From Macrostomum lignano (lineage: Eukaryota): 35,040 nucleotides of DNA. The translations under genes were made by a program, and so were the position numbers. Positions 6,101 through 26,700 of this stretch are shown here, piece after piece. The stretch is from assembly GCA_002269645.1 (NCBI GenBank), contig NIVC01004786.1, forward strand, positions 1-35,040. The letters are read 5' to 3'. The notes beneath the pieces are model-generated. The model was not told the origin of the DNA. It made no database searches and saw only the letters and a list, made by a program, of their open reading frames with translations. Within the stretch, counting starts at the first letter, position 1. Every line of letters starts with the position of its first letter.

Positions 6101-9100
6101 TCTCAGGTGTTCAGGACTAACCTAGCTGTTCAGTCTCAGGTGTTCAGGACTAACCTAGCTGTTCAGTCTCAGGTGTTCAGGACTAACCTAGCTGTTCAGC
6201 CTCAGGTGCTCAGGACTAACCTAGCTGTTCAGTCTCAGGTGTTCAGGACTAACCTAGCTGTTCAGTCTCAGGTGTTCAGGACTAACCTAGCTGTTCAGCC
6301 TCAGGTGTTCAGGACTAACCTAGCTGTTCAGCCTCAGGTGCTGAGGACTAACCTAGCTGTTCAGTCTCAGGTGTTCAGTCTCAGGTGTTCAGGACTAACC
6401 TAGCTGTTCAGTCTCAGGTGTTCAGGACTAACCTAGCTGTTCAGTCTCAGGTGTTCAGTCTCAGGTGTTCAGGACTAACCTAGCTGTTCAGTCTCAGGTG
6501 TTCAGGACTAACCTAGCTGTTCAGTCTCAGGTGTTCAGGACTAACCTAGCTGTTCAGTCTCAGGTGTTCAGGACTAACCTAGCTGTTCAGTCTCAGGTGT
6601 TCAGGACTAACCTAGCTGTTCAGTCTCAGGTAGGTTTTCAGGATTTCTAGAATTAATCAAAACGTCCTACTAAAATAACCAGCTTACACTTTTGTTCTGA
6701 ACCATTTCTTAGCACTTTTGCGATGCTTCTCAATGGCAATGCGCTGAGCTGTGAACCAGGCGGAACAAGTCTCTAGTTTAAAAAAGTTATTAAGGTAAAA
6801 AAAATTTTTAAAAGACGACGCTAAAAGCAGAGCCTATTCACAACCATAGCGTCAAAGAGGTTTCAACAGAAACAAAAAGATTTCACCCCATACTACTACA
6901 AGTAGGCAGCTTACATTACGAATTCGACCGGATTTTTTTGCACTTTTACGATTTCTCTGCACTGTAACGCTCTGCGATTGAAACCACGTGAGTAGCTTGT
7001 CCGTCAGCTCTGACGCGTCATTAAAATATTATTCAATAAAGCTAGTTGAATAAAGATTAGCTAATTCTGAGAAATTATAGATATCGCGTTGTAGAGGCTT
7101 GCGTGCAATAGAAAATATTGAAAAAATAAGTTTTTTATTAAAAACACCAGGAATTTACTGTTTTCCATCGTTTGGATCGTTTGGCACTGATTCTATGCTT
7201 AGCCATGGTGACGCCCTGGGTGACAAAATATCTATTGATTGCGCCTGACGGATTGCGGCGGGGTGTTGCACCTTTAAAACACTTATTTAACAATATAAAC
7301 AGCAAATGGCAGCAAACCGCCTGCTGAACAGAAAGATAATAGAGCGCGTTGAAGAGGCAATTTTCACAACTTACAGCCTTTTGCCTGTTACTCTTGCGCC
7401 AAATTAATCTGGAACGCAAACTAGACTGCTGCAGGAAACCGTATTCCTTCTGACACGTGGCTGCGTGAGTGCGGAATATTTGTTTCTTAGAATTTATATT
7501 TAAATATCGTTTCTTATAACATACTTTAATAAAACAAGCTATGATCTCAAAATGGCTCGTTTCACAAACTCTCAAAGCTTTCGCTATTGATTTGATTTTA
7601 TAAATGTAATTTTAGAAAAAAATCTGTTGTTTCGAAGTTTCCGGATATTGTAATCTCTTAATTGTAGATGACTAGCGTCTGTCTAAATGCACATAGGGTT
7701 GGGGGTGGGACTAGGCACAGTATTCTGTGGGACTAGCGTCTGTCTAAATGTACATAGGGTTGGGGTGATGACTAGCGTCTGTCTAAATGTACATAGGGTT
7801 GGGGTGATGACTAGCGTCTGTCTAAATGTACATAGGTTTGGGGGTGATGACTAGCGTCTGTTTAAATGTACATAGGGTTGGGGTGATGACTAGCGTCTGT
7901 CTAAATGTACATAGGGTTGGGGTGATGACTAGCGTCTGTCTAAATGTACATAGGGTTGGGGTGATGACTAGCGTCTGTCTAAATGTACATAGGGTTGGGG
8001 TGACTAGCGTCTGTCTAAATGTACATAGGTTGGGGTGATGACTAGCGTCTGTTAAATGTACATAGGGTTGGGGTGATGACTAGCGTCTGTCTAAATGTAC
8101 ATAGGGTTGGGGTGATGACTAGCGTCTGTCTAAATGTACATAGGGTTGGGGTGATGACTAGCGTCTGTCTAAATGTACATAGGGTTGGGGTGGACTAGCG
8201 TCTGTCTAAATGTACATAGGTTTGGGGTGATGACTAGCGTCTGTTTAAATGTACATAGGGTTGGGGTGATGACTAGCGTCTGTTAAATGTACATAGGGTT
8301 GGGGTAATGACTAGCGTCTGTTAAATGTACATAGGGTTGGGGGTGATGACTAGCGTCTGTTTAAATGTACATAGGTTTGGGGGTGAACTCAAAAGACGGT
8401 CACGTGATTCTACGATCTGGAAGCCTCAACAAAAGATTTTTTAAATACACGACTGAATTATTTAATAGCTTTTCCACCTTACTTGCGCACCTTTTCAATC
8501 ATCTTTGAATTTCTTAAACTGGATTCCCCCAGCATTAAATATCGACTTGATTGACTGAGTTTTTAAAACTACCAGGTTAGCTAGTATCTTAAATATAATG
8601 AGATTTATAGCATTAGCAGAAGTCTACAAAATCGGAGCACATTATACTATTATTATCACTAATATAATACAATTTGTGGGACAATAAATATGACTACAAC
8701 ATTGAAGCCAATGCACAGAGGCCTGGTGAACCCCCCGGTTCCAGCAACTCGCTTGGCATGCTAAATCAATCGGAGCCGAGACTCACCATTGTTCGCCTGT
8801 AAAATTTGGCCACATTCCTACGATTAGACAGAACTGGCTGCCTATACTGTGAGTAGACGGAGCTTAGCACGGCTGCAAAATAGGCGATTGTGAGTGCCGA
8901 GAGATGCTCAGCTGTGCTGCTGCGACTGGGCTTGCGTTGCTTAATGTCTGATTAGCACTGCGGCTTGGCCCAGTGGGAGGCTGGCCCAGCAACTGAGGAT
9001 CTGGGAGGCTGGCCCAGCAACTGAGGATCTGGGAGGCTGGCCCAGCAACTGAGGATCTGGGAGGCTGGCCCAGCAACTGAGGATCTGGGAGGCTGGCCCA

Positions 9101-10547
9101 GCAACTGACATCTGGGAGGCTGGCCCAGCAACTGAGGATCTGGGAGGCTGGCCCAGCAACTGAGGATCTGGGAGGCTGGCCCAGCAACTGACATCTGGGA
9201 GGCTGGCCCAGCAACTGACATCTGGGAGGCTGGCCCAGCAACTGAGGATCTGGGAGGCTGGCCCAGCAACTGACACTCTGGGAGGCTGGCCCAGCAACTG
9301 ACACTCTGGGAGGCTGGCCCAGCAACCGAGGATCTGGAAGGCTGGCCCAGCAACTGAGGATCTGGGAGGCTGGCCCAGCAACTGAAGATCTGGGAGGCTG
9401 GCCCAGCAACTGACACTCTGGGAGGCTGGCCCAGCAACTGAGGATAAGGGAGGCTGGCCCAGCAACTGAGGATCTGGGAGGCTGGCCCAGCAACTGAGGA
9501 TATGGGAGGCTGGCCCAGCAACTGAGGATAAGGGAGGCTGGCCCAGCAACTGAGGATCTGGGAGGCTGGCCCAGCAACTGAGGATCTGGGAGGCTGGCCC
9601 AGCAACTGAGGATCTGGGAGGGTGGCCTAGCAACTGAGGATCTGGGAGGGTGGCCTAGCAACTGAGGATCTGGGAGGCTGGCCCAGCAACTGAGGATCTG
9701 GGAGGCTGGCCCAGCAACTGAGGATCTGGGAGGCTGGCCCAGCAACTGAGGATCTGGGAGGCTGGCCCAGCAACTGAGGATCTGGGAGGGGGCCCATGTA
9801 CACGTAAGTCTAGTATTCGCTATAAAAGTCTGTCTAAATCTGCAGATTTTTAAGAAGTGTTGCAAGCATAACGCAAAACTCAAATCGGAATCCAACAGCA
9901 AACATGAGAGCCAACAAGCCTACACCAACTGACGCTAAATAGTATAGTTGAAGAAAACGACAAACAAAATGTTAAATTTATAATTTTAGGGAATAATTAA
10001 TTAGGATAATTAATGCATACAATGGGCCGCACTTCTTGAACAGCCGGGACGCCAAAGTTCTGGCGCAGTGGGAGTCTGCACACCAATTTTAGAACCAAGT
10101 AGTGTATGTAGCTCAATATAAATTGCATTGACTCAATAAATTTTTACGATTATAAATCTGAGACACCTGGGCAGCGGCAATTATAACTAATTTTAAGCGA
10201 TTTTTACGGCAGACTTGCAAACACTCGCTGGTTTCTTTCTTTCTCTGTAAACCTCTGCAACGCTATAGCTTAATAATTCAATTGAATACGGCAGTATAAG
10301 TTCATTTAAATAGACATGTAACATACAGGTAAGAAATGCAGTAAATATTAATTAACTTACTGCGCCAAACTTCAGCGTTTGCTGCAATGCCGGACACAGC
10401 CTGGGCCTGATCGATTACTTTCTTGGCCACCATCTGATTCATCGGGTGCTCGAAGCTGAGCAAATTGGAGTGGCGTTGGGTTGGCTGCCTGTCTGTCTGT
10501 GTGTGTCTGTCTGTTCTGTCTGTCTGTCTGTCTGTCCGTCTGTCTGT

Positions 10548-10848: not shown

Positions 10849-13284
10849 GTCTGCCTGTCTGTGTGTCTGTCTGTCTGTGTGTCTGTCTGTCTGCCTGTCT
10901 ATCTGTCTGTCTGTCTGTCTGTGCGGCAGCATGAAGCAAAGGCACAACTCACGGTTTAGCAAAGTCGAACAGGTGTGGTCCGCTGCCTCGCAAATTCTTA
11001 TAAGTGTCCTTCAGAAGATTCTGGAATTCCCAAGACATTCAAAGTAATTATATATAAAAACATTAACTTTTTATTGGGTCACTGGCTCAATCCCATATTT
11101 TAAGAAATTTTTTGAACAAGAATTGCATTCTACATTAGCTACTACGAGGGGCGTACCGAAAGTTTTGAGATACGCCGAAACCACAAATATCTGAAGCAAA
11201 ATTTCTGTCACAATTTTTTGAAGTAGTTGCCACCAGCTTGCACGCATTTCCTCATCCGGTGAAACCACTGCGTTCAGGCTCCAGCCCACTGTTCTTCTGG
11301 CACTGCTGACACCACCTGCTCGAACTCGAATCTTGCTGCTTTAGGGCTCTCAAACCGAGTCCCACGCAGTTGGATCTTCACCAAAGGGAAGGGAAAGAAG
11401 TCGCAGGGTGCCAGGTCAGGGAATATGCTGGATGCGTCCAACTGGACTTCATTCTCGGCCAGAAATGCCAATGTTGCAACAGCCATGTGCGCACTGGCAT
11501 TGTTGTGGTGCAGCAGCAGGCCACGAAGTCCGGTGCGCAGCCGGCGTCTGCGCCACGCATCGAGCACGAGCGGCAGGCACTGGTTAGTATACCAGTCGGC
11601 ATTGACTGTCCGCCTGTTTTGGAGCGCTACAGTCGCCAATTGGCCGGCCTGGCTGAAGAAAGTCGCCACCATCTGCTTCCCGACGCTGCGGGCCCGCTTA
11701 ACTTTCGTTGGAGTGGCATCGTCCGGAAGGAGCCAAACTGCAGAATGCTGCTTGGTTTCCGGGTCGTGCTGGCAGACCCAGGTCTCTTCGCCACTGATGA
11801 TCTCCCAGCATCACTTTGAAGTCCCAGAATCAAATCTTTCCAGCATAAACTCGCACCAAAGCACCCTCTCCGCTTTCTGGTCTCCGTTAGGTTGTGGGCA
11901 CCCAGCGGGCACACCGCTTGGAGGCTCCCAGCTTGTCGTGCAGGATGGTCGTAACTGCTGCCGATCCAATGCCGAGAGCCTCTCTGACCTATGCACAGGT
12001 CACTCGCCGGTCCTCGTCAATCATTCTTCGGACAGCAGCGATGTTTTCGTCCGTGACAGCGGAAGCTGGACGTTCCGTCCGAGGCTCGTCATCAAGGCTG
12101 CTTCGGCCCCACTTACATTCGCTGTACCACCGAAAAAACTATGGCACGTGAAGGGGCTTGATCTCCAAAGACAGCATGTAAAGTTTCAACGCACTGCTCC
12201 TACGTGAGACCTTTTCGCTGGTTGTAAACAATCATGACTCGAAAGTCGCGATTTGTCACTTCATTGGAGCAAGTACAGTTTGGTAGGGGGTATCGTTTTT
12301 AAGGATGTGATTGTGAAAGATTGACAAAAGCGCAAAGGCTGAAAATTAATACTCAATCATCTTAAAGGTGGTACAGTATGTAAATAAAAATTCCTGCAGT
12401 TGTGATTTATGAGTCAGCCGTATCTCAAAACTTTCAGTACGCCCCTCGTATAGTTAATAGCTAGCTAGTAGCTAGGCCTTTCCATTTGCTTATTTCCGCT
12501 ACACTGACTGCTACAAGAGCTCCATGAAATGCTTTCGCTACGTTCATTAATTAACAAGCCAGGCTGTCTATCTAATAAGGAAGAGAACTGAGAGTTTTCA
12601 ATAAATTTAATTCATACTACTCAGAAAGTTCATATGGTAAGTAGGCAGTGCGAATTTTAACTCTTTTTTGGCACTCACCCGAACATCCACGTTGCTGGGG
12701 CCGCCAGCAGCGCAAGCGCCGGCGCCGCCGCTGAAGCTGCTCTCCTCCTCCAGCAGCAGACAGTCGTCGTCTTCGTCGTCCCCGGGAAACGATGAGGCTC
12801 CCCCAGCATCGCTAGCAAAGCTGTCAACGTGGCCGAGAGTCTGCTGATGAAGCTGCTGGTGCTGCTGTTCCAGCTTCACGCCGAGTAGCGGCTCCTTCGG
12901 CTCCAATTTGCACGGCCGCTTTGCCGACGGCGGACTGGCGCCATCGCCGGCGCCAGCAGCAGCGGCAGCACTGGAGCAACTGGCCGCGGCTGAGTGATGC
13001 TGGCGGAGACTCTGCTGCTGCTGTTGCAGCTGCTGCAGCTGTTCCTGCAGCTCCCGATTGGAGGACTGCACCTGACCAGCGCACGGCTGCATCACATCAA
13101 CAGCCTGGTGCTGCAGGTTGCAGATGAGGCGCACAGCGGCCACCAGTTCGTCCAGCGTCATGCTGTCCAGCAGCATGCCGGCATTGAGCAGAGTGGACTC
13201 AAACAGGGTCAGCGCGGAGAATGAGGACTGAGCAGCTGACGGCTGCTGCTGATGATGGATAGGTAGCACGGATGCGGCAGACAT
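3165..13284 (-). CDS. Paralogue A of an uncharacterised C14orf93/DUF4616-like family with an internal cassette-exon array (~395 aa per isoform)
   Basis: Constant exons 13284-12679 (MSAAS..NVDVR|gtgagt), 11020-10953 ([23 protein letters not shown]), 10455-10361 ([31 protein letters not shown]|gtaagt), one cassette from 8872-4175, last exon 3497-3165 ([38 protein letters not shown]). All junctions are GT-AG and phase-consistent; every exon is homologous to paralogues B and C. Confidence 0.85.
3756..4137. repeat. Intronic minisatellite, 34 bp unit
   Basis: GACATTGGGGATTGAGTAGCGGAGCTCACTCA(T/G)G tandem copies. Confidence 0.9.
4175..4260 (-). CDS. Paralogue A cassette exon A9 (86 nt): (S)[28 protein letters not shown]
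   Basis: attttcag|GC..CGG|gtgaga; phase 1 in, phase 0 out; open; homologous to the other cassettes. Confidence 0.85.
4496..4660. repeat. Degenerate tandem repeat, ~2.5 copies of ~75 bp
   Basis: GGCCCAGTGTCAATGTACATT.GTGGGGCTTGTG.CAGTTCAG recurs. Confidence 0.7.
4738..4832 (-). CDS. Paralogue A cassette exon A8 (95 nt): (T)[31 protein letters not shown]
   Basis: ttcccccag|CT..TCG|gtaatt; phase 1/0; C-terminal half aligns with A6/A7 without gaps. Confidence 0.75.
4946..5031 (-). CDS. Paralogue A cassette exon A7 (86 nt): (T)[28 protein letters not shown]
   Basis: ttattttag|CT..GTG|gtcagt; phase 1/0; clear duplicate of A6. Confidence 0.88.
5376..5461 (-). pseudogene. Possible dead or poison cassette (86 nt, in-frame TAA)
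   Basis: attag|CT..TAT|gtattc gives exactly 86 nt and phase 1/0, but [27 protein letters not shown] shows little similarity to the others and the donor is weak. Confidence 0.3.
5793..5878 (-). CDS. Paralogue A cassette exon A6 (86 nt): (T)[28 protein letters not shown]
   Basis: atattttag|CC..GTG|gttagt; phase 1/0; shares VLSNRR with A1. Confidence 0.88.
6068..6630. repeat. Intronic minisatellite, 33 bp unit
   Basis: TCAGGTGTTCAGGACTAACCTAGCTGTTCAGTC, ~16 near-perfect copies. Confidence 0.95.
6688..6772 (-). CDS. Paralogue A cassette exon A5 (85 nt as assembled; 86 if a G is missing at the donor): (K)[28 protein letters not shown]
   Basis: ttttaaactag|AG..AAAGT|gtaagc; restoring GTG|gtaagc gives 28 codons like its siblings; peptide closely resembles A3/A4. 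Confidence 0.72.
6915..7009 (-). CDS. Paralogue A cassette exon A4 (95 nt): (K)[31 protein letters not shown]
   Basis: cgtcag|AG..AAT|gtaagc; phase 1/0; RKSAKKSGR is shared with A5/A9. Confidence 0.85.
7159..7244 (-). CDS. Paralogue A cassette exon A3 (86 nt): (S)[28 protein letters not shown]
   Basis: ccgtcag|GC..ACA|gtaaat; phase 1/0. Confidence 0.83.
7375..7460 (-). CDS. Paralogue A cassette exon A2 (86 nt): (T)[28 protein letters not shown]
   Basis: ctcacgcag|CC..GCT|gtaagt; phase 1/0; same length, more divergent peptide. Confidence 0.75.
7664..8385. repeat. Intronic minisatellite, ~39 bp unit
   Basis: GATGACTAGCGTCTGTCTAAATGTACATAGGGTTGGGGT, ~18 copies. Confidence 0.95.
8483..8568 (-). 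pseudogene. Possible dead or poison cassette (86 nt, in-frame TGA)
   Basis: cctggtag|TT..CAA|gtaagg; 86 nt, phase 1/0; [27 protein letters not shown]; strong donor but weak acceptor and weak similarity. Confidence 0.35.
8787..8872 (-). CDS. Paralogue A cassette exon A1 (86 nt): (T)[28 protein letters not shown]
   Basis: ttttgcag|CC..ATG|gtgagt; phase 1/0; an in-frame upstream acceptor at 8911 is also possible; FYRRTM mirrors FIRRLM of B4. Confidence 0.83.
8975..9790. repeat. Intronic minisatellite, 28 bp unit
   Basis: CTGGGAGGCTGGCCCAGCAACTGAGGAT, ~29 copies; source of three spurious long ORFs. Confidence 0.95.
10488..10922. repeat. (TGTC)n microsatellite with a derived 24 bp higher-order unit
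   Basis: Fills most of paralogue A intron 10952-10456. Confidence 0.95.
11145..12448 (-). mobile_element. Full-length (1304 bp) defective mariner transposon, irritans/Hsmar2-like TIR
   Basis: 30 bp TIRs CGAGGGGCGTAC(C/T)GAAAGTTTTGAGATACG (1 mismatch), TA duplication at 11143-44 and 12449-50. Minus-strand transposase remnants: HTH region, [32 protein letters not shown]. Several stops and frameshifts. Sits in intron 1 of paralogue A. Confidence 0.95.
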
Positions 13285-16718: not shown

Positions 16719-19700
16719 CTACACCCCATAGCTCTCCTCGCCGTCTCCGCTGCCGCCGCCGGGCAGAGCCTGCCAGGCGGGATTCCTGGCCCAGGTCAGG
16801 CTGTCAGGCGGAGGCGGCCGGTTGGACAGCACAGCCGGATCGCGCTGCACCCGGCTGATCTCGGCCCGCTGCTTGTCATCGGCCAGCCTGGCTAGGAAAG
16901 TTTCGTCTAATTTCTGCTTCACAGCTCGCAGCTCGTCGCTCTCCCATGGCAACGAGCGGACCTTCATCTCAGAGTCTAAATCTGTGCCGCCCTCCTCATC
17001 CGAGCTGGTGTAGTCTCTGGTTAGCACGCTCTCGAATTTCGTTTGGGCAGACGGATCCAGCTCGTCCTTAATGAGCTCGTAGCTCTTCTGCCGCCTGTTC
17101 AGCTTCTATAGGCGGACAGTGGGAATTGGCAGGTTGGTTATCCAGGTTAATTGCATAAAGCGGCCGAGTGTGAAGAATGGAGCATCCACTCTCATCATTG
17201 CAGAGGAGTGACACACTAATATGAAAAGTGAAACAGTCACTGCAGAGGAGTGACACACTAATATGGAGAGTGAAACAGTCATTGCAGAGGAGTGACACAC
17301 TAATATGGAGAGTGAAACAGTCACTGCAGAGGAGTGACACACAAATATGAAGAGTGAAACAGTCACTGCAGAGGAGTGACATACTAATATGAAGAGTGAA
17401 ACAGTCACTGCAGAAGAGTGACACACTAATATGGAGAGTGAAACAGTCACTGCAGAGGAGTGACACACTAATATGAAAAGTGAAACAGTCACTGCAGAGG
17501 AGTGACACACTAATATGGAGAGTGAAACAGTCACTGCAGAGGAGTGACACACTAATATGGAGAGTGAAACAGTCACTGCAGAGGAGTGACACACAAATAT
17601 GAAGAGTGAAACAGTCACTGCAGAGGAGTGACATACTAATATGAAGAGTGAAACAGTCACAGCAGAGGAGTGACACACTAATATGAAGAGTGAAACAGTC
17701 ATTGCAGAGGAGTGACACACTAATATGGAGAGTGAAACAGTCACTGCAGAGGAGTGACACACTAATATGGAGAGTGAAACAGTCACTGCAGAGGAGTGAC
17801 ACACTAATATGAAGAGTGAAACAGTCACTGCAGAGGAGTGACACACTAATATGGAGAGTGAAGCAGTCACTGCAGAGGAGTGACACACTAATATGGAGAG
17901 TGAAGCAGTCACTGCAGAGGAGTGACACACTAATATGAAGAGTGAAACAGTCATTGCAGAGGAGTGACACACTAATATGGAGAGTGAAACAGTCACTGCA
18001 GAGGAGTGACACACTAATATGGAGAGTGAAACAGTCACTGCAGAGGAGTGACACACTAATATGGAAAGCGAAACACCTACAACTGAGACACAGAGCGAGA
18101 TCAGGTGGAGATAGTACATGCAGTAAAATCGCAGGAGTGGCGCAACGTCTTTGGCAACAACGGCCCACATCTGTTACTAAGGCAACTCAGCCCATTTCGC
18201 TGACTCCTGAGGCTAAGATTCGGAAAATCGTAGAAAAAATGCCATTAAATGGCGAGCAGGTGAAAAATCACAGACCATTAATCGCCGTATGAATCGCTGG
18301 GTGTCCACATTCTTAACAACATTTCTGAACGGATACTTGAGATTCTTGGCGTAATAGTAGCGAAAGTACTTCACTGCTAGGGCTAAAAACAAACAAACAA
18401 GGATAGATAACCAACGCTAGACGCATTCGGATTAGAGAATGGCAGGACGGGCTGGTGCAGGCTGGTGGCTTCTATCTGGCCTATCCTAGCTTCTTTTTTC
18501 TTCTTCAAAAATTCAAAACAGATTTAACAAACGCACCAGACTCTGCCGCACGATATTCATTGTGTCAAGCTCGCGTTTGCGCAGCTTATAAGCCGAGCGC
18601 AAGTTTTTACTATAGTGGCCGCCGAAATAACGCCTGGCTGCGTCTGAACAGTAATTCATTATGTATGATTATTAAGTTATCAATGTTCTAACTGGCTAGG
18701 TTCATTTGGATCGTTTGCAGGGCTGTTGTGCACTGTGCAGACAGCACAATATCTATTCCATTCCCAACTTTTAGCTGATAATTGGTCACGCGTTTGGCTA
18801 AAAATTATGAAGCTACGTTATGGTTACGAGTTATTCAACTATTTGTTTTAACTAAAATTGGCCTTAAAATCGGTGCAGCAAAGTGGCTGCGTATCATCTT
18901 GTACGAGTACAGCTACTTACCATTCTTTCTTTTCTGTGAACACTCACGAACAGTCGCAGTCATTCCCATTAGACACTCGCAATCCTTCCCGTGAACAGTC
19001 GCAATCATTCCCGTGAACATTCGCAATCATTCCCGTGAACAGTCGCAATCCTTCCCGTGAACAGTCGCAATCATTCCCGTGAACACTCGCAATCATTCCC
19101 GTGAACAGTCGTAATCCTTCCCGTGAACAGTCGCAGTCATTCCCGTGAACAGTCGTAATCCTTCCCGTGAACAGTCGCAGTCATTCCCGTGAACAGTCGC
19201 AGTCATTCCCGTGAACAGTCACAGTCATTCCCGTGAACAGTCGTAATCCTTCCCGTGAACAGTCGCAGTCATTCCCGTGAACAGTCGCAATCATTCCCGT
19301 GAGACACTCACAAGTGAGGCTGATACGCGAAAAGAAGGCCGATGCCGTTTGAGATGCTGGTATTGCCAGTTCTTGTAATACTGAGGACTGAGATAGCGAT
19401 GGCTCTTGGCTGGACAAGCAAATTTGAATTTAGCATTGAGCTGTGTTGTTGCCTTTCAGAACTAGCAACAGGAAAACCCGAAGCGCTGGTACAAAAGAAG
19501 ACTACAGGCATCGCAGGGTCTTGTGCGCTTAAATTGGAATTAGCTCTTTTACGGCATTGCTTACCAGAAACAGGTTGACAGAAGTTTTCATTTTCTCCTT
19601 CTGAAAGCCGTACTTCTGAGCCGGTTTCAAGGTGGACGTATAATAAATCCGCAGGTATTTGTTGTAAACCGAGTCTGCGCGATAAGACCGCGTGCCAGCC

Positions 19701-22141
19701 GACGGTGCTTATGATTTCATTAATAATCCCCAAAATCCCCCATTTCCCGAGCTGCACAACAGACTGTTGGGCAATTGGGCACGATTTGAGAGATTATAGC
19801 CAAATTTAGCTGATAATATTACAAAACTACTACTGCTGGCGATTATAATAAAATGCTAATTAGATAGTTGCGTCATACAAGGTTACGTAACAAGTGGGCC
19901 AATGCATCGGCCATAGTGTTTGTCACAAGCATATTTATTGAATTAGTTCACATTGCTAACTAACGGCCCTGCAACGCCCGTATTTTTAGAATATGCAATC
20001 AGGTGTACAGGTGTGGGAAATTGTACAACAATAGGCAAAATAATTAATATCCCTATGCATAAAAGTATTGTAAAGCAGGAATAAACTAATCGTATAGATA
20101 CTAGAACCATCAAATAGATTATACCGATATGTAGCGTAAACAAATTTCTACACTACCAACCTTCTAGAGCAAATTACTTGCAATTATTGAACCCATTAAC
20201 ACTATAGTATGCCATAATATCGTCTACCGATATGTAGTGTAAACAACTTTCTGCACTACTAGCCTTCTATTGACATAAAGTTGACTACCGATATGTAGCG
20301 AATATTGATTTCTACACGACTTTCAATGAAAAAGTGCAGAATGGAGAAGCAGACTACTCACTGCGCCAGGCCTCAACATTAGCGGGCTTGTGCCTGCTCA
20401 GCTCCAGAGCCTTGTCAATAACCCGATTGGCTGCCAGCACGTTGGCCCTGGCAGAATAGGGCAGCGAGAAGTCGAACACGTTGGTGCCAGTCTCGTCTTT
20501 CAACACTCGATAGGCTTTGCGCAGGATGCCTTTCCATTCGTTTGACAGCTCGCCGCTAGCTGAAGAGTCCGCGCCGCCGCCTGCGCCACCAGCTCCGCGG
20601 CCACCGCTGAAGCTGGCCTGCTGATGCTGCTGCTGCTGGTACAGCTGCTGGGACTGCGAGTGCTGATCGAAAATCAAATCGGCTTCCATCAGTACGCAAT
20701 CGTCGTCGGAATCGATAATCTCGGGCTTAATTAAAGTTGATGAAGCGGCTGCCGCAGTCGGACCGGTTGTTGCCAAGGCGCTATCTAGCAGCTTTTTACT
20801 ACTGCTACTATTGCTACTGCTATTACCAACGTTGCCAATGGTGACAGCTGCCGAGCCCACAGAGGTTCCGGGCAGGTGAGAAGCGACTGACATTGACTGA
20901 GTAACCGGCGGTGGACACTGGGAATGTAATAGTAGGATCATTTTGTGCACAATGAACTCATTGATAGGTAATGTAAGTCACGTCGTAATACACCCCTTAA
21001 AGTAATATTCTAAGAAAATCAATTTAAACTTGCAATCTATTTTTAGAATGAGTCAGATCTAATTTTAGAATGAGTCATGTGCAAACTGAAATGACTCAGA
21101 ACCCTATAGAGGACCAGCGTTTATTTGATCAAGGAACCGGATTTCAGCAGCTGTCTGCTTAACCCCATATATGGTAGTGCTCAAATATGCATGACCGCTT
21201 AATCAAACATGTGACGTAAGAAATTATCCGATCTCTAACCAGTTTTTGCCCAAAATTTTGCTATAAATTCAAGTGAAAATCCGAATCAAAAATTTTTTGA
21301 CTCGGAGCGGGCTCAAAGAATACTTCGAAGAAACAAAGAAGGCCAATATTTGAGGGATGAAATCCTGTCCTATTGATAAGCACTTACCATATTTAGTTCT
21401 TTGTTGCTAGCGTTAATAAGTTGATTAATTGAGTTCACGAGAGCCACATTTGAGAAAGGCCCCTTGTTTCTTAGGATATATTCCTAGAGGATTTATTGTT
21501 TTGATTTGAGCTATCCGTTACGTTTCAGACGTAACGAAGAAGACGCCCTTCAGGAGAACCTAAAATTACAGAAACCCAGAGAATACAATTGTTCATTTGG
21601 GCGCACGTTCTACTAGTGTTAATTCCGAGCTCAAGAACACCGTCAAGACTTCTTATTTGCTCTCGCTTTTGATTGACCCACCCACAGATAGAGTCAAGGA
21701 CTTCCGGTGGTAACAATCCCGGAGATATTTGATTTTGCATATACCTAGGCACTTGTTTCCCAGTGTCTAGAAGTGGGAGTTTTCGAGTGACTGATCACCA
21801 CTCTTAAACTCTTCAGTAATAATTATTTAAGGGCAGCCACTCACCAGCGCGTGCTCATCTGCCACATTAGCTAGCCGCTGCACAGTGGGATCCAGCACCT
21901 CCAACAGGTGGCCGTGCAGTTGGGCCACAATTTTGAAAGCCACTAACAGGTCCCGCACAGCCATGTTATCAATCAGCATTGTGGCGCTGGATATTGTGCA
22001 CTCGAACATTGTCAGCGGGGAGAAGCTGCCGCCTCCGCCTCCGCCTCCGCCTCCGCCTCCGCCGCCGCTGCCGCCGCCACCGCCACCGCCAAGCGGCTGA
22101 TGGTGCCCGGCGGCGAAGGGAGGAATGCCAACTGTTGCCAT
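16719..22141 (-). CDS. Paralogue B of the same family (~445-449 aa), with four candidate cassette exons
   Basis: Exons 22141-21845 (MATVG..polyG..FSPLTMFECTISS..EHAL|gtgagt), 20917-20362 (..IKPE..EWKGILRKAYRVLK..FDFSLPYS..ANVEAWR|gtgagt), one cassette from 19674-18276, last exon 17105-16719 (KLNRRQKSYE..YTSSDEE..VRSLPWES..). Confidence 0.87.
17191..18072. repeat. Intronic minisatellite, 42 bp unit
   Basis: GAGGAGTGACACACTAATATGGAGAGTGAAACAGTCACTGCA, ~21 copies; source of the spurious 354/366 aa ORFs. Confidence 0.95.
18276..18382 (-). CDS. Paralogue B cassette B4 (107 nt): (T)LAVKYFRYYYAKNLKYPFRNVVKNVDTQRFIRRLM
   Basis: gtttttag|CC..ATG|gtctgt; phase 1/0; donor weaker than its siblings. Confidence 0.8.
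18537..18643 (-). CDS. Paralogue B cassette B3 (107 nt): (N)AARRYFGGHYSKNLRSAYKLRKRELDTMNIVRQSL
   Basis: actgttcag|AC..CTG|gtgcgt; phase 1/0; YF...Y.KNL is shared with B4. Confidence 0.85.
18945..19303. repeat. Intronic minisatellite, 22 bp unit
   Basis: GAACAGTCGCAATCATTCCCGT, ~16 copies, starting right after the B2 donor. Confidence 0.93.
19312..19409 (-). CDS. Paralogue B cassette B2 (98 nt): (T)KSHRYLSPQYYKNWQYQHLKRHRPSFRVSASL
   Basis: ttgcttgtccag|CC..CTT|gtgagt; phase 1/0; RYL...Y.KN aligns with B3. Confidence 0.82.
19565..19674 (-). CDS. Paralogue B cassette B1 (110 nt): (N)SVYNKYLRIYYTSTLKPAQKYGFQKEKMKTSVNLFL
   Basis: tatcgcgcag|AC..CTG|gtaagc; phase 1/0; same length and first bases (ACTC) as the single exon of paralogue C. 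Confidence 0.85.
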
Positions 22142-23786: not shown

Positions 23787-26700
23787 CTAGAAGCGGAACC
23801 CAGACGCAGGATTATCAGCAGTGTCAGTCGCAGTCCTGTTGGCTGTAGTTGCGGCATCGCCCCAGCCAACCACAGCCCAGGCCTGCGGACTGTCGGGCGT
23901 CGGTCGCTGACTAATCCAGGCTGGGTGTCGCCGAACTCGCTCGAGCTCGCGCCGCTCTCTAGGATTAGCGATGACCTCGGCAAAGTGCCGATCGAGCATG
24001 GCTTTCAACCTGGCTGCCTCGGCCGACTCCCAGGACAGCCGTTTCACCCGCAGCACCGTGGAGCTGCTGTCGCCTTCATCGGCGGGCACCTCGTCATCCG
24101 AGCTGGTGTACTGAAGATCGAGTAGGGCGCGCAACCGGGCCGTGTCAACGGGGCTGAGGGCGCCGTGAGCCTGCAGATTGTCGTAGCTGCGCTGCCGCTG
24201 GCTCAGCTTCTGCGGTTGGGAGGGGGTCACAGCTGCCTTGGCTACTGTAGCGGGGGGGGTGTCACAGCTGCCTTGGCTACTGTAGCGGGGGGGTGTCACA
24301 GCTGCCTTGGCTAATGTAGCGGGAGGTCACAGCTGCCTTGGCTACTGTAACGGGGGGTCACAGCTGTCTTGGCTACTGTAGCGGGGGGTGTCACAGCTGC
24401 CTTGGCTACTGTAGCGGGGGGGTCTACAGCTGCCTTGGCTACTGTAGCGGGGGGGGGGGTCACAGCTGTCTTGGCTACTGTAGCGGGGGGTCACAGCTGC
24501 CTTGGCTACTGTAGCGGGGGGAGGTCACAGCTGTCTTGGCTACTGTAGCGGGGGGTCACAGCTGACTTGGCTACTGTAGCGAGGGGGGTCACAGCTGACT
24601 TGGCTACTGTAGCGAGGGGGGTCCCAGCTGACTTGGCTACTGTAGCGGGGGGGGTCACAGCTGCCTCACCTTGGCAGCTCGGGATGCCCAGCCGTGCCTG
24701 GGCTGGTGCTGTCGGCGATAATTTCTACGAAGAATGTCTTTGAACCAGTAGCGCATGAATGTCTCCACAAGGATGGAGTCTGCAAATAAAATCAGACAGA
24801 CAAGCGGTTGTCCTGGAGTCCGGAATTAAAGTAAAAATTACAAATATGGCTTCTGAGTCTAGATATCGATGGTCTTTGGTTTATGTGGTAGCGCTAAACA
24901 GTGCGGCTTGGAAAGGCTGCCCTCACTCTAATGGTCAATCAATGAGCCTCTACTACCCTCACGATTCACCAATGAGCCTCTACTACCCTCACGATTCACC
25001 AATGAGCCTCTACTACCCTCACGATTCACCAATGAGCCTCTACTACCCTCACGATTCACCAATGAGCCTCTACTACCCTCACGATTCACCAATGAGCCTC
25101 TACTACCCTCACGATTCACCAATGAGCCTCTACTACCCTCACGATTCACCAATGAGCCTCTACTACCCCATTATTCACCAATGAGCTTCTAGTGGCATCA
25201 CGATTCACCAATAGCCTCTATTACCCTCACGATTCACCAATGAGCCTCTACCATCCCTAAGATTCACCAATGAGCCTGTCTACCACCCCAATATTCACCA
25301 ATGAGCCTGTCTACCACCCCAATATTCACCAATGAGCCTGTCTACCACCCCACTATTCACCAATGAGCCTGTCTACTATCCCACTTTTCACCAATGGGCA
25401 TCTCTACTACCCTCACGATTCACCAATGAGCCTCTACTACCCTCACGATTCACCAATGAGCCTCTACTACCCTCACGATTCACCAATGAGCCTCTACTAC
25501 CCCATTATTCACCAATGAGCTTCTAGTGGCATCACGATTCACCAATAGCCTCTATTACCCTCACGATTCACCAATGAGCCTCTACCATCCCTAAGATTCA
25601 CCAATGAGCCTGTCTACCACCCCAATATTCACCAATGAGCCTGTCTACCACCCCACTATTCACCAATGAGCCTGTCTACTATCCCACTTTTCACCAATGG
25701 GCATCTCTACTACCCTCCCGATTCGCCAATGAGCCTGTTTACCACCCCACGATTCACTAATAATTGACTACTACCTCCACGGCCTAGCAATAAGTTACTA
25801 CTTTGGCTAGGATACTACTTAATCTATGGCTGTAATAATGAAACAAACATGACGCTCACTTTTCCACGACTCAACATCGGGCGGCGGTTGGCTAGTCATT
25901 GACACGGCCTGGTTGATAATGGCCTGGGCCGCCTTCAAATTCACTGGGGCAGAGTATCTGCGGGTGCAGTTAGCGATCTAGCGCTGCTATTACATATAAA
26001 AAGGATGCTAGCCTAGTGGTTAAAGCGTCGGACTCTCGACTTGAAGGTCGAGGGTTCGATTCCCGATCCCAATGGAACGATTTGTGTCCTTGACACCCAG
26101 CTATAAAAAATGGGTGCCAGAAAAAGCTGGGGAAATTGAGGGTGTGTGTGGCGACCCCCCCCCCCCCAGTCATACATGCGCAACTGCTGGCCGACCTGGC
26201 CACCGTAAATTGTGGTGGACCAGGGGTAAGTCGCAAAAATGCCCACCCCAAAGAATACAGACGTAGTACTAATTAGATGACGAGGCATTTAGCCCTTACA
26301 AGAGAGTCATAGTTACTCCTGCCGTTTACCCAAAATTGCGTTAATGTTGCTCTAGGGTTTCTTTCACAGGTAGGTCACATTTTTGGTCAAAAAGTAAGTC
26401 GCATGGCCAGTGTAAATCAGGGGGTTGCGCATGTATGCCCCAGTCCTTAGACTGAACAGCTGTACGCAGCCTTCAGTCCAATTCAGTCAATAGCTGCGGC
26501 TGAGCTGTCGGTTGCACACCTGGCCCAATAAGGCCGGGTGTAAATCAATTAATTAATTAAAAATCATGATGTACAACCTAAACTAAAACTGAATAATTGG
26601 GTTCTGAACTTTTACAGACATGAGACACTTGGAATTCAATATTTCAGTGCCGACAATGGCATCCACATCGAACTCAGTCCAAATTCAGTGCCATGCCTCA

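What the first reader, a model, noticed from the sequence alone, without database searches (positions are those of the whole stretch)
18276..19674. Independent second cassette array (four exons) at the homologous position in paralogue B
Seen: 19674-19565 (110 nt), 19409-19312 (98), 18643-18537 (107) and 18382-18276 (107), all phase 1->0 and 3n+2, share [KR]Y[FL]xxxYxKNL-like starts (SVYNKYLRIYYTSTLK, KSHRYLSPQYYKNW, AARRYFGGHYSKNLR, LAVKYFRYYYAKNLK). Their lengths and sequences are closer to each other and to the single C exon than to the A cassettes. Inference: the same exon was amplified separately in A and B, i.e. repeated selection for diversifying this helix, while C keeps one copy.
Basis: partly seen in the sequence, partly recalled or inferred. 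Interest (0 to 1): 0.88.

Follow-up and report, generated by a model that had tools for sequence, protein, structure and literature searches.

The report
Flatworm alternative-exon array with RNA docking site
Four interchangeable copies of one coding exon sit in a Macrostomum lignano (flatworm) gene of unknown function, and a conserved intron sequence can base-pair just upstream of three of them, the arrangement that insects use in Dscam to pick one exon per transcript and that I found no report of in flatworms.

Summary
At 19674-19565, 19409-19312, 18643-18537 and 18382-18276 (minus strand) lie four homologous exons. Each has AG/GT splice sites, is open in phase 1->0, and is 3n+2 long. Any number of cassettes other than one gives a premature stop.

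The window is a 35,040-bp contig of Macrostomum lignano, not an arthropod. Against a duplicated copy of the locus, the cassettes are 421/422 nt identical, while the surrounding intron differs at 5.5% of sites. B1, B2 and B3 each have an orthologous cassette in paralogous genes elsewhere in the genome, with pN about 0.3-0.4 against saturated pS.

New here: a 15-nt docking site (19979-19965, GGGCGTTGCAGGGCC) lies in the intron after the constitutive exon. It is conserved in five paralogous genes whose introns otherwise barely align. Complementary selector sequences lie 48-92 nt upstream of B2, B3 and B4, but not of B1.

The B array predates gene B, and gene A carries a homologous docking core.

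Only the junction into B4 has transcript-derived support. Use of B1-B3 and the RNA pairing itself are inferred.

The parts
21845..22141 (-). Gene B exon 1 (Met at 22141; donor GTGAGT after 21845). Encodes the conserved N-terminal FSPLTMFECTISSATMLID... helices.
   Evidence: matches P0002 residues 1-93.
20362..20917 (-). Gene B constitutive exon 2, ending ...ANVEAWR with one base left over (phase 1); donor GTGAGT at 20361.
   Evidence: 559/565 identical to L001 over 20926-20362.
19955..19983 (-). Docking site ATACGGGCGTTGCAGGGCCGTTAGTTAGC, with core GGGCGTTGCAGGGCC at 19979-19965. It is the only place in the first intron that pairs strongly with the regions upstream of several cassettes.
   Evidence: Core is 15/15 identical in L001 and conserved in L002, L003, L004 and L005. 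The motif occurs once per B-type gene.
19855..19881 (-). Second conserved intron block, CTTGTATGACGCAACTATCTAATTAGC, between the docking site and B1. Function unknown.
   Evidence: Invariant columns in the alignment of the window and five other loci.
19565..19674 (-). Cassette B1, 110 nt: (N)SVYNKYLRIYYTSTLKPAQKYGFQKEKMKTSVNLFL. No strong selector; a weak one at 19762-19746.
   Evidence: (110/110 vs L001); nearest relative is L005 cassette 1; folding z = +0.4.
19502..19545 (-). Selector for B2 (core GACCCTGCGATGCCTGTAG, 19520-19502; a 5' arm AGCTAATTCC at 19545-19536 pairs with the 3' extension of the docking site). Ends 92 nt upstream of the B2 acceptor.
   Evidence: Duplex about -35 kcal/mol, z = -4.9; dock+selector fold z = -6.3; core 20/20 identical in L001.
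19312..19409 (-). Cassette B2, 98 nt: (T)KSHRYLSPQYYKNWQYQHLKRHRPSFRVSASL.
   Evidence: (97/98 vs L001); orthologue is L005 cassette 3, also 98 nt, bootstrap 94.5%.
18708..18727 (-). Selector for B3, AACAGCCCTGCAAACGATCC, about 63 nt upstream of the B3 acceptor.
   Evidence: (inverted repeat I3); dock+selector fold z = -4.6.
18537..18643 (-). Cassette B3, 107 nt: (N)AARRYFGGHYSKNLRSAYKLRKRELDTMNIVRQSL.
   Evidence: (107/107); orthologue is L002 cassette 6, bootstrap 97.5%, pN 0.29 vs pS 1.0.
18446..18491 (-). Selector for B4 (core CCAGCCTGCACCAGCCCGTC, 18465-18446; interrupted helix extending to 18491). Ends 63 nt upstream of the B4 acceptor.
   Evidence: p = 0.02; p = 0.01; fold z = -2.4.
18276..18382 (-). 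Cassette B4, 107 nt: (T)LAVKYFRYYYAKNLKYPFRNVVKNVDTQRFIRRLM. The only cassette found in an annotated, RNA-seq-derived model of this gene's duplicate.
   Evidence: (107/107); P0002 = PAA94809.1.
17195..18075 (-). 42-nt minisatellite in the last intron (21 units here, 37 selector-like motif matches at the 42-nt spacing in L001). Each unit carries a weak selector-like CCTCTGCA(A/G)TG. Possible decoy or a by-product; role unknown.
   Evidence: -16 to -19 kcal/mol per unit against the docking site.
16722..17105 (-). Gene B last coding exon, KLNRRQKSYELIKDELD...TSSDEE...LPWESDELRAVKQKLDE..., phase 0. Stop codon at 16721-16719.
   Evidence: 379/384 identical to L001.

Best explanation
B1-B4 are four homologous coding exons of one gene, used as alternatives: a mutually exclusive exon (MXE) cluster. 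The gene is a duplicated copy of M. lignano BOX15_Mlig028318. It belongs to an uncharacterised metazoan protein family with no Pfam domain.

Each cassette supplies about 33-37 residues, rich in aromatic and basic residues, in the middle of one long alpha-helix.

Proposed mechanism:
- The pairing loops out the cassettes in between and brings the chosen cassette next to the constitutive donor. This is the model proposed for the Dscam exon 6 cluster.
- B1 lies nearest the docking site and has no strong selector. It would be used when no long-range pairing forms.
- Products with 0, 2, 3 or 4 cassettes are out of frame or hit a stop.

The array and its docking site are old. They predate the duplications that produced the five B-type genes examined, and probably the A/B split.

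Shown here: exon anatomy, conservation, cross-paralogue orthology, purifying selection, docking-site conservation, and positional enrichment of complementarity.

Inferred: that B1-B3 are actually spliced in, that inclusion is exclusive, and that the RNA pairing forms and decides the choice.
For: Exon anatomy and frame. Every product with 0, 2, 3 or 4 cassettes ends in a premature stop.

Conservation: cassettes are 421/422 identical to L001 against 5.5% intron divergence, p = 2.6e-8.

Orthologous cassettes in paralogous genes keep length, splice sites and frame, with pN 0.29-0.43 against pS 0.8-1.0.

The AlphaFold model of paralogue P0001 places the cassette inside helix 244-299 at pLDDT about 90.

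Transcript-derived NCBI models (built as described in PMC5730564):
- constitutive exon -> B4 in the duplicate of this gene (P0002);
- a single cassette spliced on both sides in three paralogues (P0001, P0003, P0004).

A different cassette of the same paralogue appears in UniProt gene models (P0016, P0011).

Docking site:
- It is the best-pairing window of the first intron against all four upstream regions (-26, -33, -28.5, -28 kcal/mol, against -15 to -20 for most other windows).
- The core is conserved in five paralogous genes whose introns otherwise barely align.
- The motif occurs once per B gene.

Selectors:
- The top 1.5% docking-complementary windows fall 47-95 nt upstream of cassettes in 3 of 4 peaks (window), 5 of 6 (L002) and 6 of 6 (L003).
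- Per-cassette empirical p <= 0.02 for B2-B4, for 6 of 7 L002 cassettes and for 7 of 8 L003 cassettes. Shuffled docking sites mostly give 0-2, at most 4.
- Dock+selector folds give z = -6.3, -4.6 and -2.4.
- All selectors pair with the same GTTGCAGGG core, so the pairings exclude one another.
- Sense-strand pairing is more stable than antisense, Wilcoxon p = 0.004.
Against: No transcript or protein in the databases searched contains B1, B2 or B3.

The one model for this gene's duplicate uses B4 and then runs into the intron. Some transcript-derived models of paralogues skip all cassettes (P0008, P0161).

B1 has no convincing selector.

In paralogues L004 and L005 only 1-2 cassettes have a significant selector.

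The docking site is G+C-rich. Unrelated stretches after B4 reach -24 to -26 kcal/mol against the 48-nt version.

Covariation between docking site and selectors is mostly one-sided (G-C to G-U), with no clear double compensatory change. The window and L001 are too close to test covariation.

Nothing here measures RNA structure or splicing.
Confidence: 0.62

Rival explanations
1. The cassettes are real alternative exons, but choice and exclusivity come only from splice-site competition plus reading-frame and nonsense-mediated-decay filtering. On this view the conserved GGGCGTTGCAGGGCC and its complements are binding sites for a protein, or a DNA-level element, rather than RNA pairing partners.
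For: The 3n+2 lengths alone remove all wrong combinations. B1, and most cassettes of L004 and L005, lack significant selectors. No double compensatory changes were seen. G+C-rich sequence gives strong background duplexes.
Against: There is one copy in one orientation next to the constitutive exon and many copies in the complementary orientation at a fixed distance upstream of cassettes. A protein or DNA motif would not need this. Departures from perfect complementarity are enriched for G-U, which makes the sense strand pair better than the antisense strand.
Confidence: 0.2
2. Only B4 is a functional exon. B1-B3 are decaying duplicates (pseudo-exons) that happen to remain open.
For: Only B4 is seen in an annotated model. 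No protein containing B1, B2 or B3 was found.
Against: B1 and B3 are 100% and B2 99% identical to L001, where introns differ by 5.5%. B2 and B3, and probably B1, have orthologues in other genes that keep the same length, intact splice sites and pN well below pS after synonymous saturation. B2 and B3 have the strongest selectors.
Confidence: 0.06
3. One reading: gene B amplified its own exon independently of A, as a recent gene-specific diversification, and C retains the ancestral single copy.
For: A-type and B-type cassettes fall in separate groups (A-type clade 57.5%). They differ in length.
Against: The window's four B cassettes are monophyletic in 0.5% of bootstraps. B2 and B3 have strongly supported orthologues in other genes. 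Four other B-type paralogues carry arrays with the same docking core. Gene A shares the docking core.
Confidence: 0.08

Closest known systems
Dscam1 exon 6 cluster of insects and crustaceans (docking site plus selector sequences; Graveley model as summarised in PMC6071210)
   Same: A tandem array of homologous exons. A single conserved docking site in the intron just downstream of the constitutive exon. A selector upstream of each variable exon. All selectors are complementary to the same docking nucleotides, so only one pairing can form.
   Different: Four exons here (3-8 in the other B-type paralogues examined), against 48. A different gene family of unknown function and a different phylum (Platyhelminthes). 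The first cassette usually lacks a selector. The cassette lengths (3n+2) add a frame filter. The same docking core is kept across a whole set of paralogous genes. Nothing has been tested experimentally.
14-3-3zeta, Mhc and MRP1 mutually exclusive exon clusters of insects (competing RNA structures, as summarised in PMC6071210)
   Same: Small clusters of a few exons, with intron-intron competing base pairing.
   Different: In those genes the docking site lies downstream of the cluster. Here it is upstream, and no downstream docking candidate was found.
Human and mouse ATE1 exons 7a/7b (PMC7797038)
   Same: Mutually exclusive exons outside arthropods, controlled by competing conserved intronic complementary elements.
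   Different: Two exons only, with additional ultra-long-range helices. It has been validated experimentally, which this locus has not.
Tandem-duplication model for the origin of competing structures (Ivanov and Pervouchine 2018, PMC6071210)
   Same: Duplicating an exon together with one arm of a flanking stem-loop yields several selectors for one docking site. The fixed selector-to-acceptor distance seen here (about 45-100 nt in most cassettes) is what that model predicts.
   Different: That is a model of origin, not a family. Here it is only consistent with the data, not demonstrated.

Membership tests
Tandem mutually exclusive exon (MXE) cluster | Adjacent exons that are homologous and of similar length | tested here: met
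   Lengths 110, 98, 107 and 107 nt. Shared KY[FL]..[YF]..NLK motif. An HMM scan finds exactly these four.
Tandem mutually exclusive exon (MXE) cluster | Each exon has usable splice sites and fits the same reading-frame phase between the flanking constitutive exons | tested here: met
   AG and GT at all eight boundaries. All four are phase 1->0 and give full-length open reading frames.
Tandem mutually exclusive exon (MXE) cluster | Exactly one exon of the array is present in mature mRNA | not testable with these tools
   No RNA-seq reads are available here. Indirect evidence: the transcript-derived model P0002 joins the constitutive exon to B4. Models of the paralogues carry one cassette each (P0001, P0003, P0004), with other cassettes in P0016 and P0011. 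0, 2, 3 or 4 cassettes give premature stops.
Tandem mutually exclusive exon (MXE) cluster | All alternatives are maintained by selection as coding sequence | tested here: met
   421/422 identical against 5.5% intron divergence. Orthologue pairs have pN 0.29-0.43 against pS 0.8-1.0.
Docking-site / selector-sequence control (Dscam exon 6 type) | One conserved docking site in the intron flanking the cluster | tested here: met
   19979-19965. 15/15 identical in L001. The core is conserved in L002, L003, L004 and L005 amid otherwise poorly alignable introns. One occurrence per gene.
Docking-site / selector-sequence control (Dscam exon 6 type) | A selector complementary to the docking site next to every variable exon | tested here: inconclusive
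   Present for B2, B3 and B4 (p <= 0.01-0.02; z = -6.3, -4.6, -2.4) and absent for B1 (z = +0.4). In paralogues: 6/7, 7/8, 1/3 and 1-2/6 cassettes.
Docking-site / selector-sequence control (Dscam exon 6 type) | Selectors compete for the same docking nucleotides | tested here: met
   All ungapped registers overlap the GTTGCAGGG core.
Docking-site / selector-sequence control (Dscam exon 6 type) | Compensatory covariation between docking site and selectors | tested here: inconclusive
   GGGCG/CGCCC against GGACG/CGTCC (L003), and CGTTG/CAACG against CATTG/CAATG (L004), are suggestive. However, the same selector variants also occur as G-U pairs elsewhere. The sense strand pairs better than the antisense strand, p = 0.004.
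Docking-site / selector-sequence control (Dscam exon 6 type) | Disrupting the pairing changes exon choice and compensatory mutation restores it | not testable with these tools
   Requires minigene or transgenic experiments.

The most novel reading that the evidence does not exclude
A Dscam-exon-6-style docking/selector system operates in a flatworm, inherited across a whole paralogous gene family. The five B-type genes examined (the window's gene with its duplicate L001, plus four paralogues) share one docking core, and at least one A-type gene carries a homologous core. Each gene would then express one of 3-9 variants of a single helix. This would be an origin of large RNA-structure-guided exon arrays outside arthropods, with paralogues serving as natural replicates for how selectors and docking sites co-evolve.
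Probability: 0.5. Interest if true: 0.78.

Novelty: new member of a known kind. Interest (0 to 1): 0.7.

Why it matters
According to the literature read here (PMC6071210, PMC7797038), multi-exon clusters guided by a docking site and selectors are documented mainly in insect genes, with two-exon cases in mammals. My full-text searches found no report in flatworms.

If the pairing is real, this locus shows that the same solution arose, or persisted, in Spiralia. It would also come with an unusual resource: several paralogous arrays in one genome share a docking core but differ in cassette number and selector strength. That makes questions about the origin, gain and loss of selectors directly testable.

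M. lignano is transgenic-tractable (PMC5730564), so docking and selector mutants are feasible.

There are practical consequences for annotation. UniProt gene models of this family concatenate several cassettes (P0005, P0171). Some NCBI transcript-derived models skip every cassette (P0008, P0161) or run into the intron (P0002, P0170).

Tried and rejected
- **Arthropod origin.** My first guess was Drosophila-like. The protein search returned only M. lignano. The window length equals a 35,040-bp contig of GCA_002269645.1.
- **Known domains or folds.** Pfam gave nothing for the B protein, its relatives or distant homologues. A PDB sequence profile gave nothing. Foldseek against PDB had no hit with E <= 0.001. 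Function stays unknown.
- **Known RNAs.** Rfam and tRNA scans of the window found nothing.
- **Extra or relic cassettes in B.** tblastn with all cassettes found only weak hits, none convincing after multiple testing.
- **A downstream docking site** (14-3-3zeta/Mhc type) in the last intron: no window stands out.
- **The three 54-nt repeats at 20113-20330 as docking candidates.** They pair poorly with cassette-upstream regions. Their core motif also occurs elsewhere in L004 and L005, so they look like a dispersed repeat.
- **Reversed docking site as a negative control.** This was uninformative because the core CGTTGC reads the same backwards. Shuffled docking sites were used instead.
- **A formal pair-count on dock+selector rows.** Not run, because choosing the best window per cassette fits the rows to the structure.
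- **Literature.** No paper names these gene models.
- **The inserted ORF in gene A's intron.** It looked like a mariner/Tc1 transposase to me, but Pfam gave no hit.
Full report
**1. What the sequence is**

The window is eukaryotic. It carries three tandem paralogues on the minus strand: C at about 27456-23787, B at 22141-16719 and A at about 13299-3165.

A protein search with a spliced B model returned only Macrostomum lignano proteins. One cluster member, PAA46593.1 (BOX15_Mlig007426g1), is exactly my model of gene C. It sits on a contig of 35,040 bp, the length of the window. So the window is a whole contig of assembly GCA_002269645.1.

A second copy of the same C-B-A cluster lies on NIVC01000001.1 (locus L001). 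It is collinear with the window. In the gene B region it is about 94-95% identical in introns. The assembly's authors state that it contains about 180 Mb of duplicated blocks at least 95% identical (PMC5730564).

**2. The observation**

- Constitutive exon 2 (20917-20362) ends ...ANVEAWR with one base left over and a GTGAGT donor.
- The last exon starts at 17105 (ctatAG|AAGCTG, KLNRRQK...) in phase 0.
- B1 (19674-19565, 110 nt), B2 (19409-19312, 98 nt), B3 (18643-18537, 107 nt) and B4 (18382-18276, 107 nt) each have an AG acceptor and a GT donor. Each is open in the required frame and is 3n+2 long.

I enumerated every AG...GT, 3n+2, open interval in the 3.2-kb region and scored them with an HMM of cassette peptides. 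Exactly these four were returned.

Skipping all cassettes, or including two or all four, gives a premature stop. Three cassettes total 3n nt and so shift the frame.

**3. Are they real exons?**

*Conservation against the duplicated locus.* The cassettes differ from L001 at 1 of 422 positions. Non-repeat intron differs at 88 of 1598 (Fisher p = 2.6e-8; each cassette alone p = 0.002-0.026). This matches the constitutive exons, at 6/565 and 5/384.

*Cassettes in paralogous genes.* Other B-type genes elsewhere in the genome also have arrays at the same junction: L002 has seven cassettes, L003 at least eight, L004 three and L005 six.
- B3 is orthologous to L002 cassette 6 (20/35 residues identical, both 107 nt).
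- B2 is orthologous to L005 cassette 3 (16/32, both 98 nt).
- B1 is nearest to L005 cassette 1.
- In these pairs synonymous sites are saturated (pS 0.8-1.0) while pN is 0.29-0.43. Length, frame and splice sites are kept.
- This is purifying selection on the encoded peptide over a long time. It argues strongly against pseudo-exons.

*Transcript evidence.* NCBI's BOX15 models come from RNA-seq-based transcript assembly (PMC5730564).
- P0002, the L001 copy of gene B, joins the constitutive exon to B4 and then runs into the intron.
- In paralogues, P0001, P0003 and P0004 each carry one cassette spliced on both sides.
- UniProt models of the same genes carry a different cassette (P0016, P0011).
- No database protein contains B1, B2 or B3. 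Their use is therefore inferred, not shown.

**4.

*Finding the docking site.* I scanned the first intron (20361-19675) in 28-nt windows for pairing with the regions upstream of all four cassettes. One place stands out: 19983-19955, ATACGGGCGTTGCAGGGCCGTTAGTTAGC. Its duplexes are -26, -33, -28.5 and -28 kcal/mol, against -15 to -20 for most other windows.

*Conservation of the docking site.*
- The core GGGCGTTGCAGGGCC is 15/15 identical in L001.
- It is one of only two conserved islands when the first introns of the five paralogous genes are aligned. L002 and L005 have the identical core, L003 has GGACGTTGCAGGGCT and L004 has GCGCATTGCAAGGCC.
- The motif C[GA]TTGCA[GA][GA]G occurs on the gene strand once per B-type gene in loci of 24-36 kb.

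*Position of the selectors.* I slid the 21-nt docking site along each cluster and took the best 1.5% of windows.
- In the window there are four peaks. Three lie 61-87 nt upstream of B2, B3 and B4.
- In L002, five of six peaks lie 56-66 nt upstream of cassettes.
- In L003, six of six lie 47-95 nt upstream.
- The per-cassette empirical p against non-zone stretches is 0.000, 0.000 and 0.010 for B2, B3 and B4, and 0.28 for B1.
- Six of seven L002 cassettes and seven of eight L003 cassettes reach p <= 0.02.
- Only one of three in L004 and one to two of six in L005 are significant.
- Shuffled docking sites mostly give 0-2 significant cassettes, at most 4.

*Folding.* Dock plus selector, folded as one strand, gives z = -6.3 (B2), -4.6 (B3), -2.4 (B4) and +0.4 (B1).

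*Competition and strand.* All selectors pair with the same GTTGCAGGG core, so only one pairing can form at a time. Pairing is on average 1.8 kcal/mol stronger on the transcribed strand than on the antisense strand (Wilcoxon p = 0.004). That is expected if G-U pairs in RNA are tolerated. It is not expected for a DNA or protein-binding motif.

*Limits.*
- The docking site is G+C-rich and reaches -24 to -26 kcal/mol against unrelated intron when a 48-nt version is used.
- Covariation is mostly one-sided.
- Nothing here measures RNA structure.

**5. How it most likely works**

The anatomy is that of the Dscam exon 6 cluster as summarised in PMC6071210: a docking site just after the constitutive exon, and a selector upstream of each variable exon.
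- The inferred sequence of events is as follows. One selector pairs with the docking site. The cassettes between them are looped out. The cassette just downstream of the paired selector is spliced to exon 2, and then to the last exon.
- B1 has no strong selector and lies closest to the docking site. It would be the default when no long-range helix forms. The first cassette also lacks a selector in L002, L004 and L005.
- The 3n+2 lengths add a second safeguard through premature stops.
- What prevents the downstream cassettes from also being included is unknown here, as it was in the original Dscam model.
- The fixed selector-to-acceptor distance fits the tandem-duplication origin proposed by Ivanov and Pervouchine (PMC6071210).

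**6. What the cassette encodes**

The family has no Pfam domain. A profile search of 1.8 billion proteins found 556 relatives. They include uncharacterised proteins of a hemichordate, a sea star, a bivalve and amphioxus.

In an AlphaFold model of paralogue P0001, the cassette (residues 249-284) lies inside one long helix, 244-299, at pLDDT about 90. The overall pLDDT is 63, and the region from residue 185 on is mostly 85-95. No structural neighbour was found.

So "diversifying a helix" is reasonable. What the helix binds is unknown.

**7.

A neighbour-joining tree of 41 cassettes gives the following:
- B2 pairs with L005 cassette 3 (94.5%), B3 with L002 cassette 6 (97.5%) and B1 with L005 cassette 1 (49.5%).
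- The four window B cassettes are monophyletic in 0.5% of bootstraps.
- A-type cassettes, from the window plus L002 and L004, form their own group (57.5%).

Hence the B array is older than gene B. It has been inherited, with gains and losses, by the B-type paralogues examined.

A's nine cassettes (8872-8787 ... 4260-4175) look largely like a lineage-specific expansion, since A-type paralogues have one to four. Yet gene A has a docking core, AGCGTTGCAGAGG at 10264-10252, with selectors 60-99 nt upstream of A3, A4, A5 and A8. Its similarity to B's core suggests that the alternative-exon system predates the A/B split.

C has one cassette, confirmed by PAA46593.1, and no docking motif.

**8. Verdict**

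The most interesting content is the conserved docking/selector architecture in a flatworm gene family.

It is a new member of a known kind of system. The evidence is strong comparative and thermodynamic evidence. There is no direct evidence for splicing of B1-B3 or for the RNA pairing.

Noticed in passing
window 19881-19855 (minus strand): A second conserved intronic block, CTTGTATGAC...CTAATTAGC, lies 75-250 nt downstream of the docking site in the five B-type paralogous genes examined. It contains a palindromic CTAATTAG. Function unknown; it could be a protein-binding splicing element.
   Followed up: partly
window 17195-18075 (minus strand): The 42-nt minisatellite in the last intron of B carries a weak selector-like CCTCTGCA(A/G)TG in every unit (-16 to -19 kcal/mol against the docking site). 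There are 21 units here, and 37 motif matches at the same 42-nt spacing in L001. It could be a decoy or balancer, or an amplified former selector.
   Followed up: partly
window 10264-10252, and 8628-8605, 7367-7344, 7102-7079, 6864-6841, 4916-4893: Gene A has its own docking candidate, AGCGTTGCAGAGG, about 95 nt after its constitutive donor. Complementary sites lie 60-99 nt upstream of cassettes A3, A4, A5 and A8. There is also a strong orphan site at 8628-8605 with no recognised cassette after it.
   Followed up: partly
window about 12614-11144: About 1.47 kb inside gene A, between its first coding exon and the next, is absent from the duplicated locus L001. It holds ORFs (for example 11274-11672) that looked like a mariner/Tc1 transposase to me, but Pfam gave no hit.
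   Followed up: partly
window 20113-20330 (minus strand): Three copies of a 54-nt repeat containing GCTACATATCGGTA lie in the first intron of B. The same motif occurs in L004 and L005 at other positions, so it is probably a small dispersed repeat, not part of the splicing system.
   Followed up: yes
whole window; L001: Most introns of the three genes contain a minisatellite of 15-42-nt units (for example 18948-19302, 8974-9796, 24940-25761). In the 42-nt array of gene B's last intron, the copy number differs between the two copies of the locus.
   Followed up: no
whole window: The window length equals a complete 35,040-bp contig of GCA_002269645.1. NCBI annotates gene C on it (PAA46593.1, BOX15_Mlig007426g1). 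No protein returned by the searches is an annotated product of the window's own genes B or A.
   Followed up: partly
loci L002, L004, L005 (database proteins P0005, P0171, P0008, P0161, P0170): Existing gene models mishandle these arrays. UniProt models string several cassettes or pieces of them together. Some RNA-seq-derived NCBI models skip every cassette (frameshift) or retain the intron.
   Followed up: yes
L002, L003, L004, L005: The tandem order B-type then A-type (C-B-A in L005, as in the window) recurs at four other places in the genome. The whole cluster has therefore been duplicated repeatedly.
   Followed up: partly
proteins P0057, P0059, P0077, P0082: The protein family has distant, uncharacterised relatives in a hemichordate, a sea star, a bivalve and amphioxus. 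They share the ...Y[FY].S.[KR]D... helix, an acidic SSDEE/SSEES patch and the L.WES..L...K..LD motif. None has a Pfam domain.
   Followed up: partly
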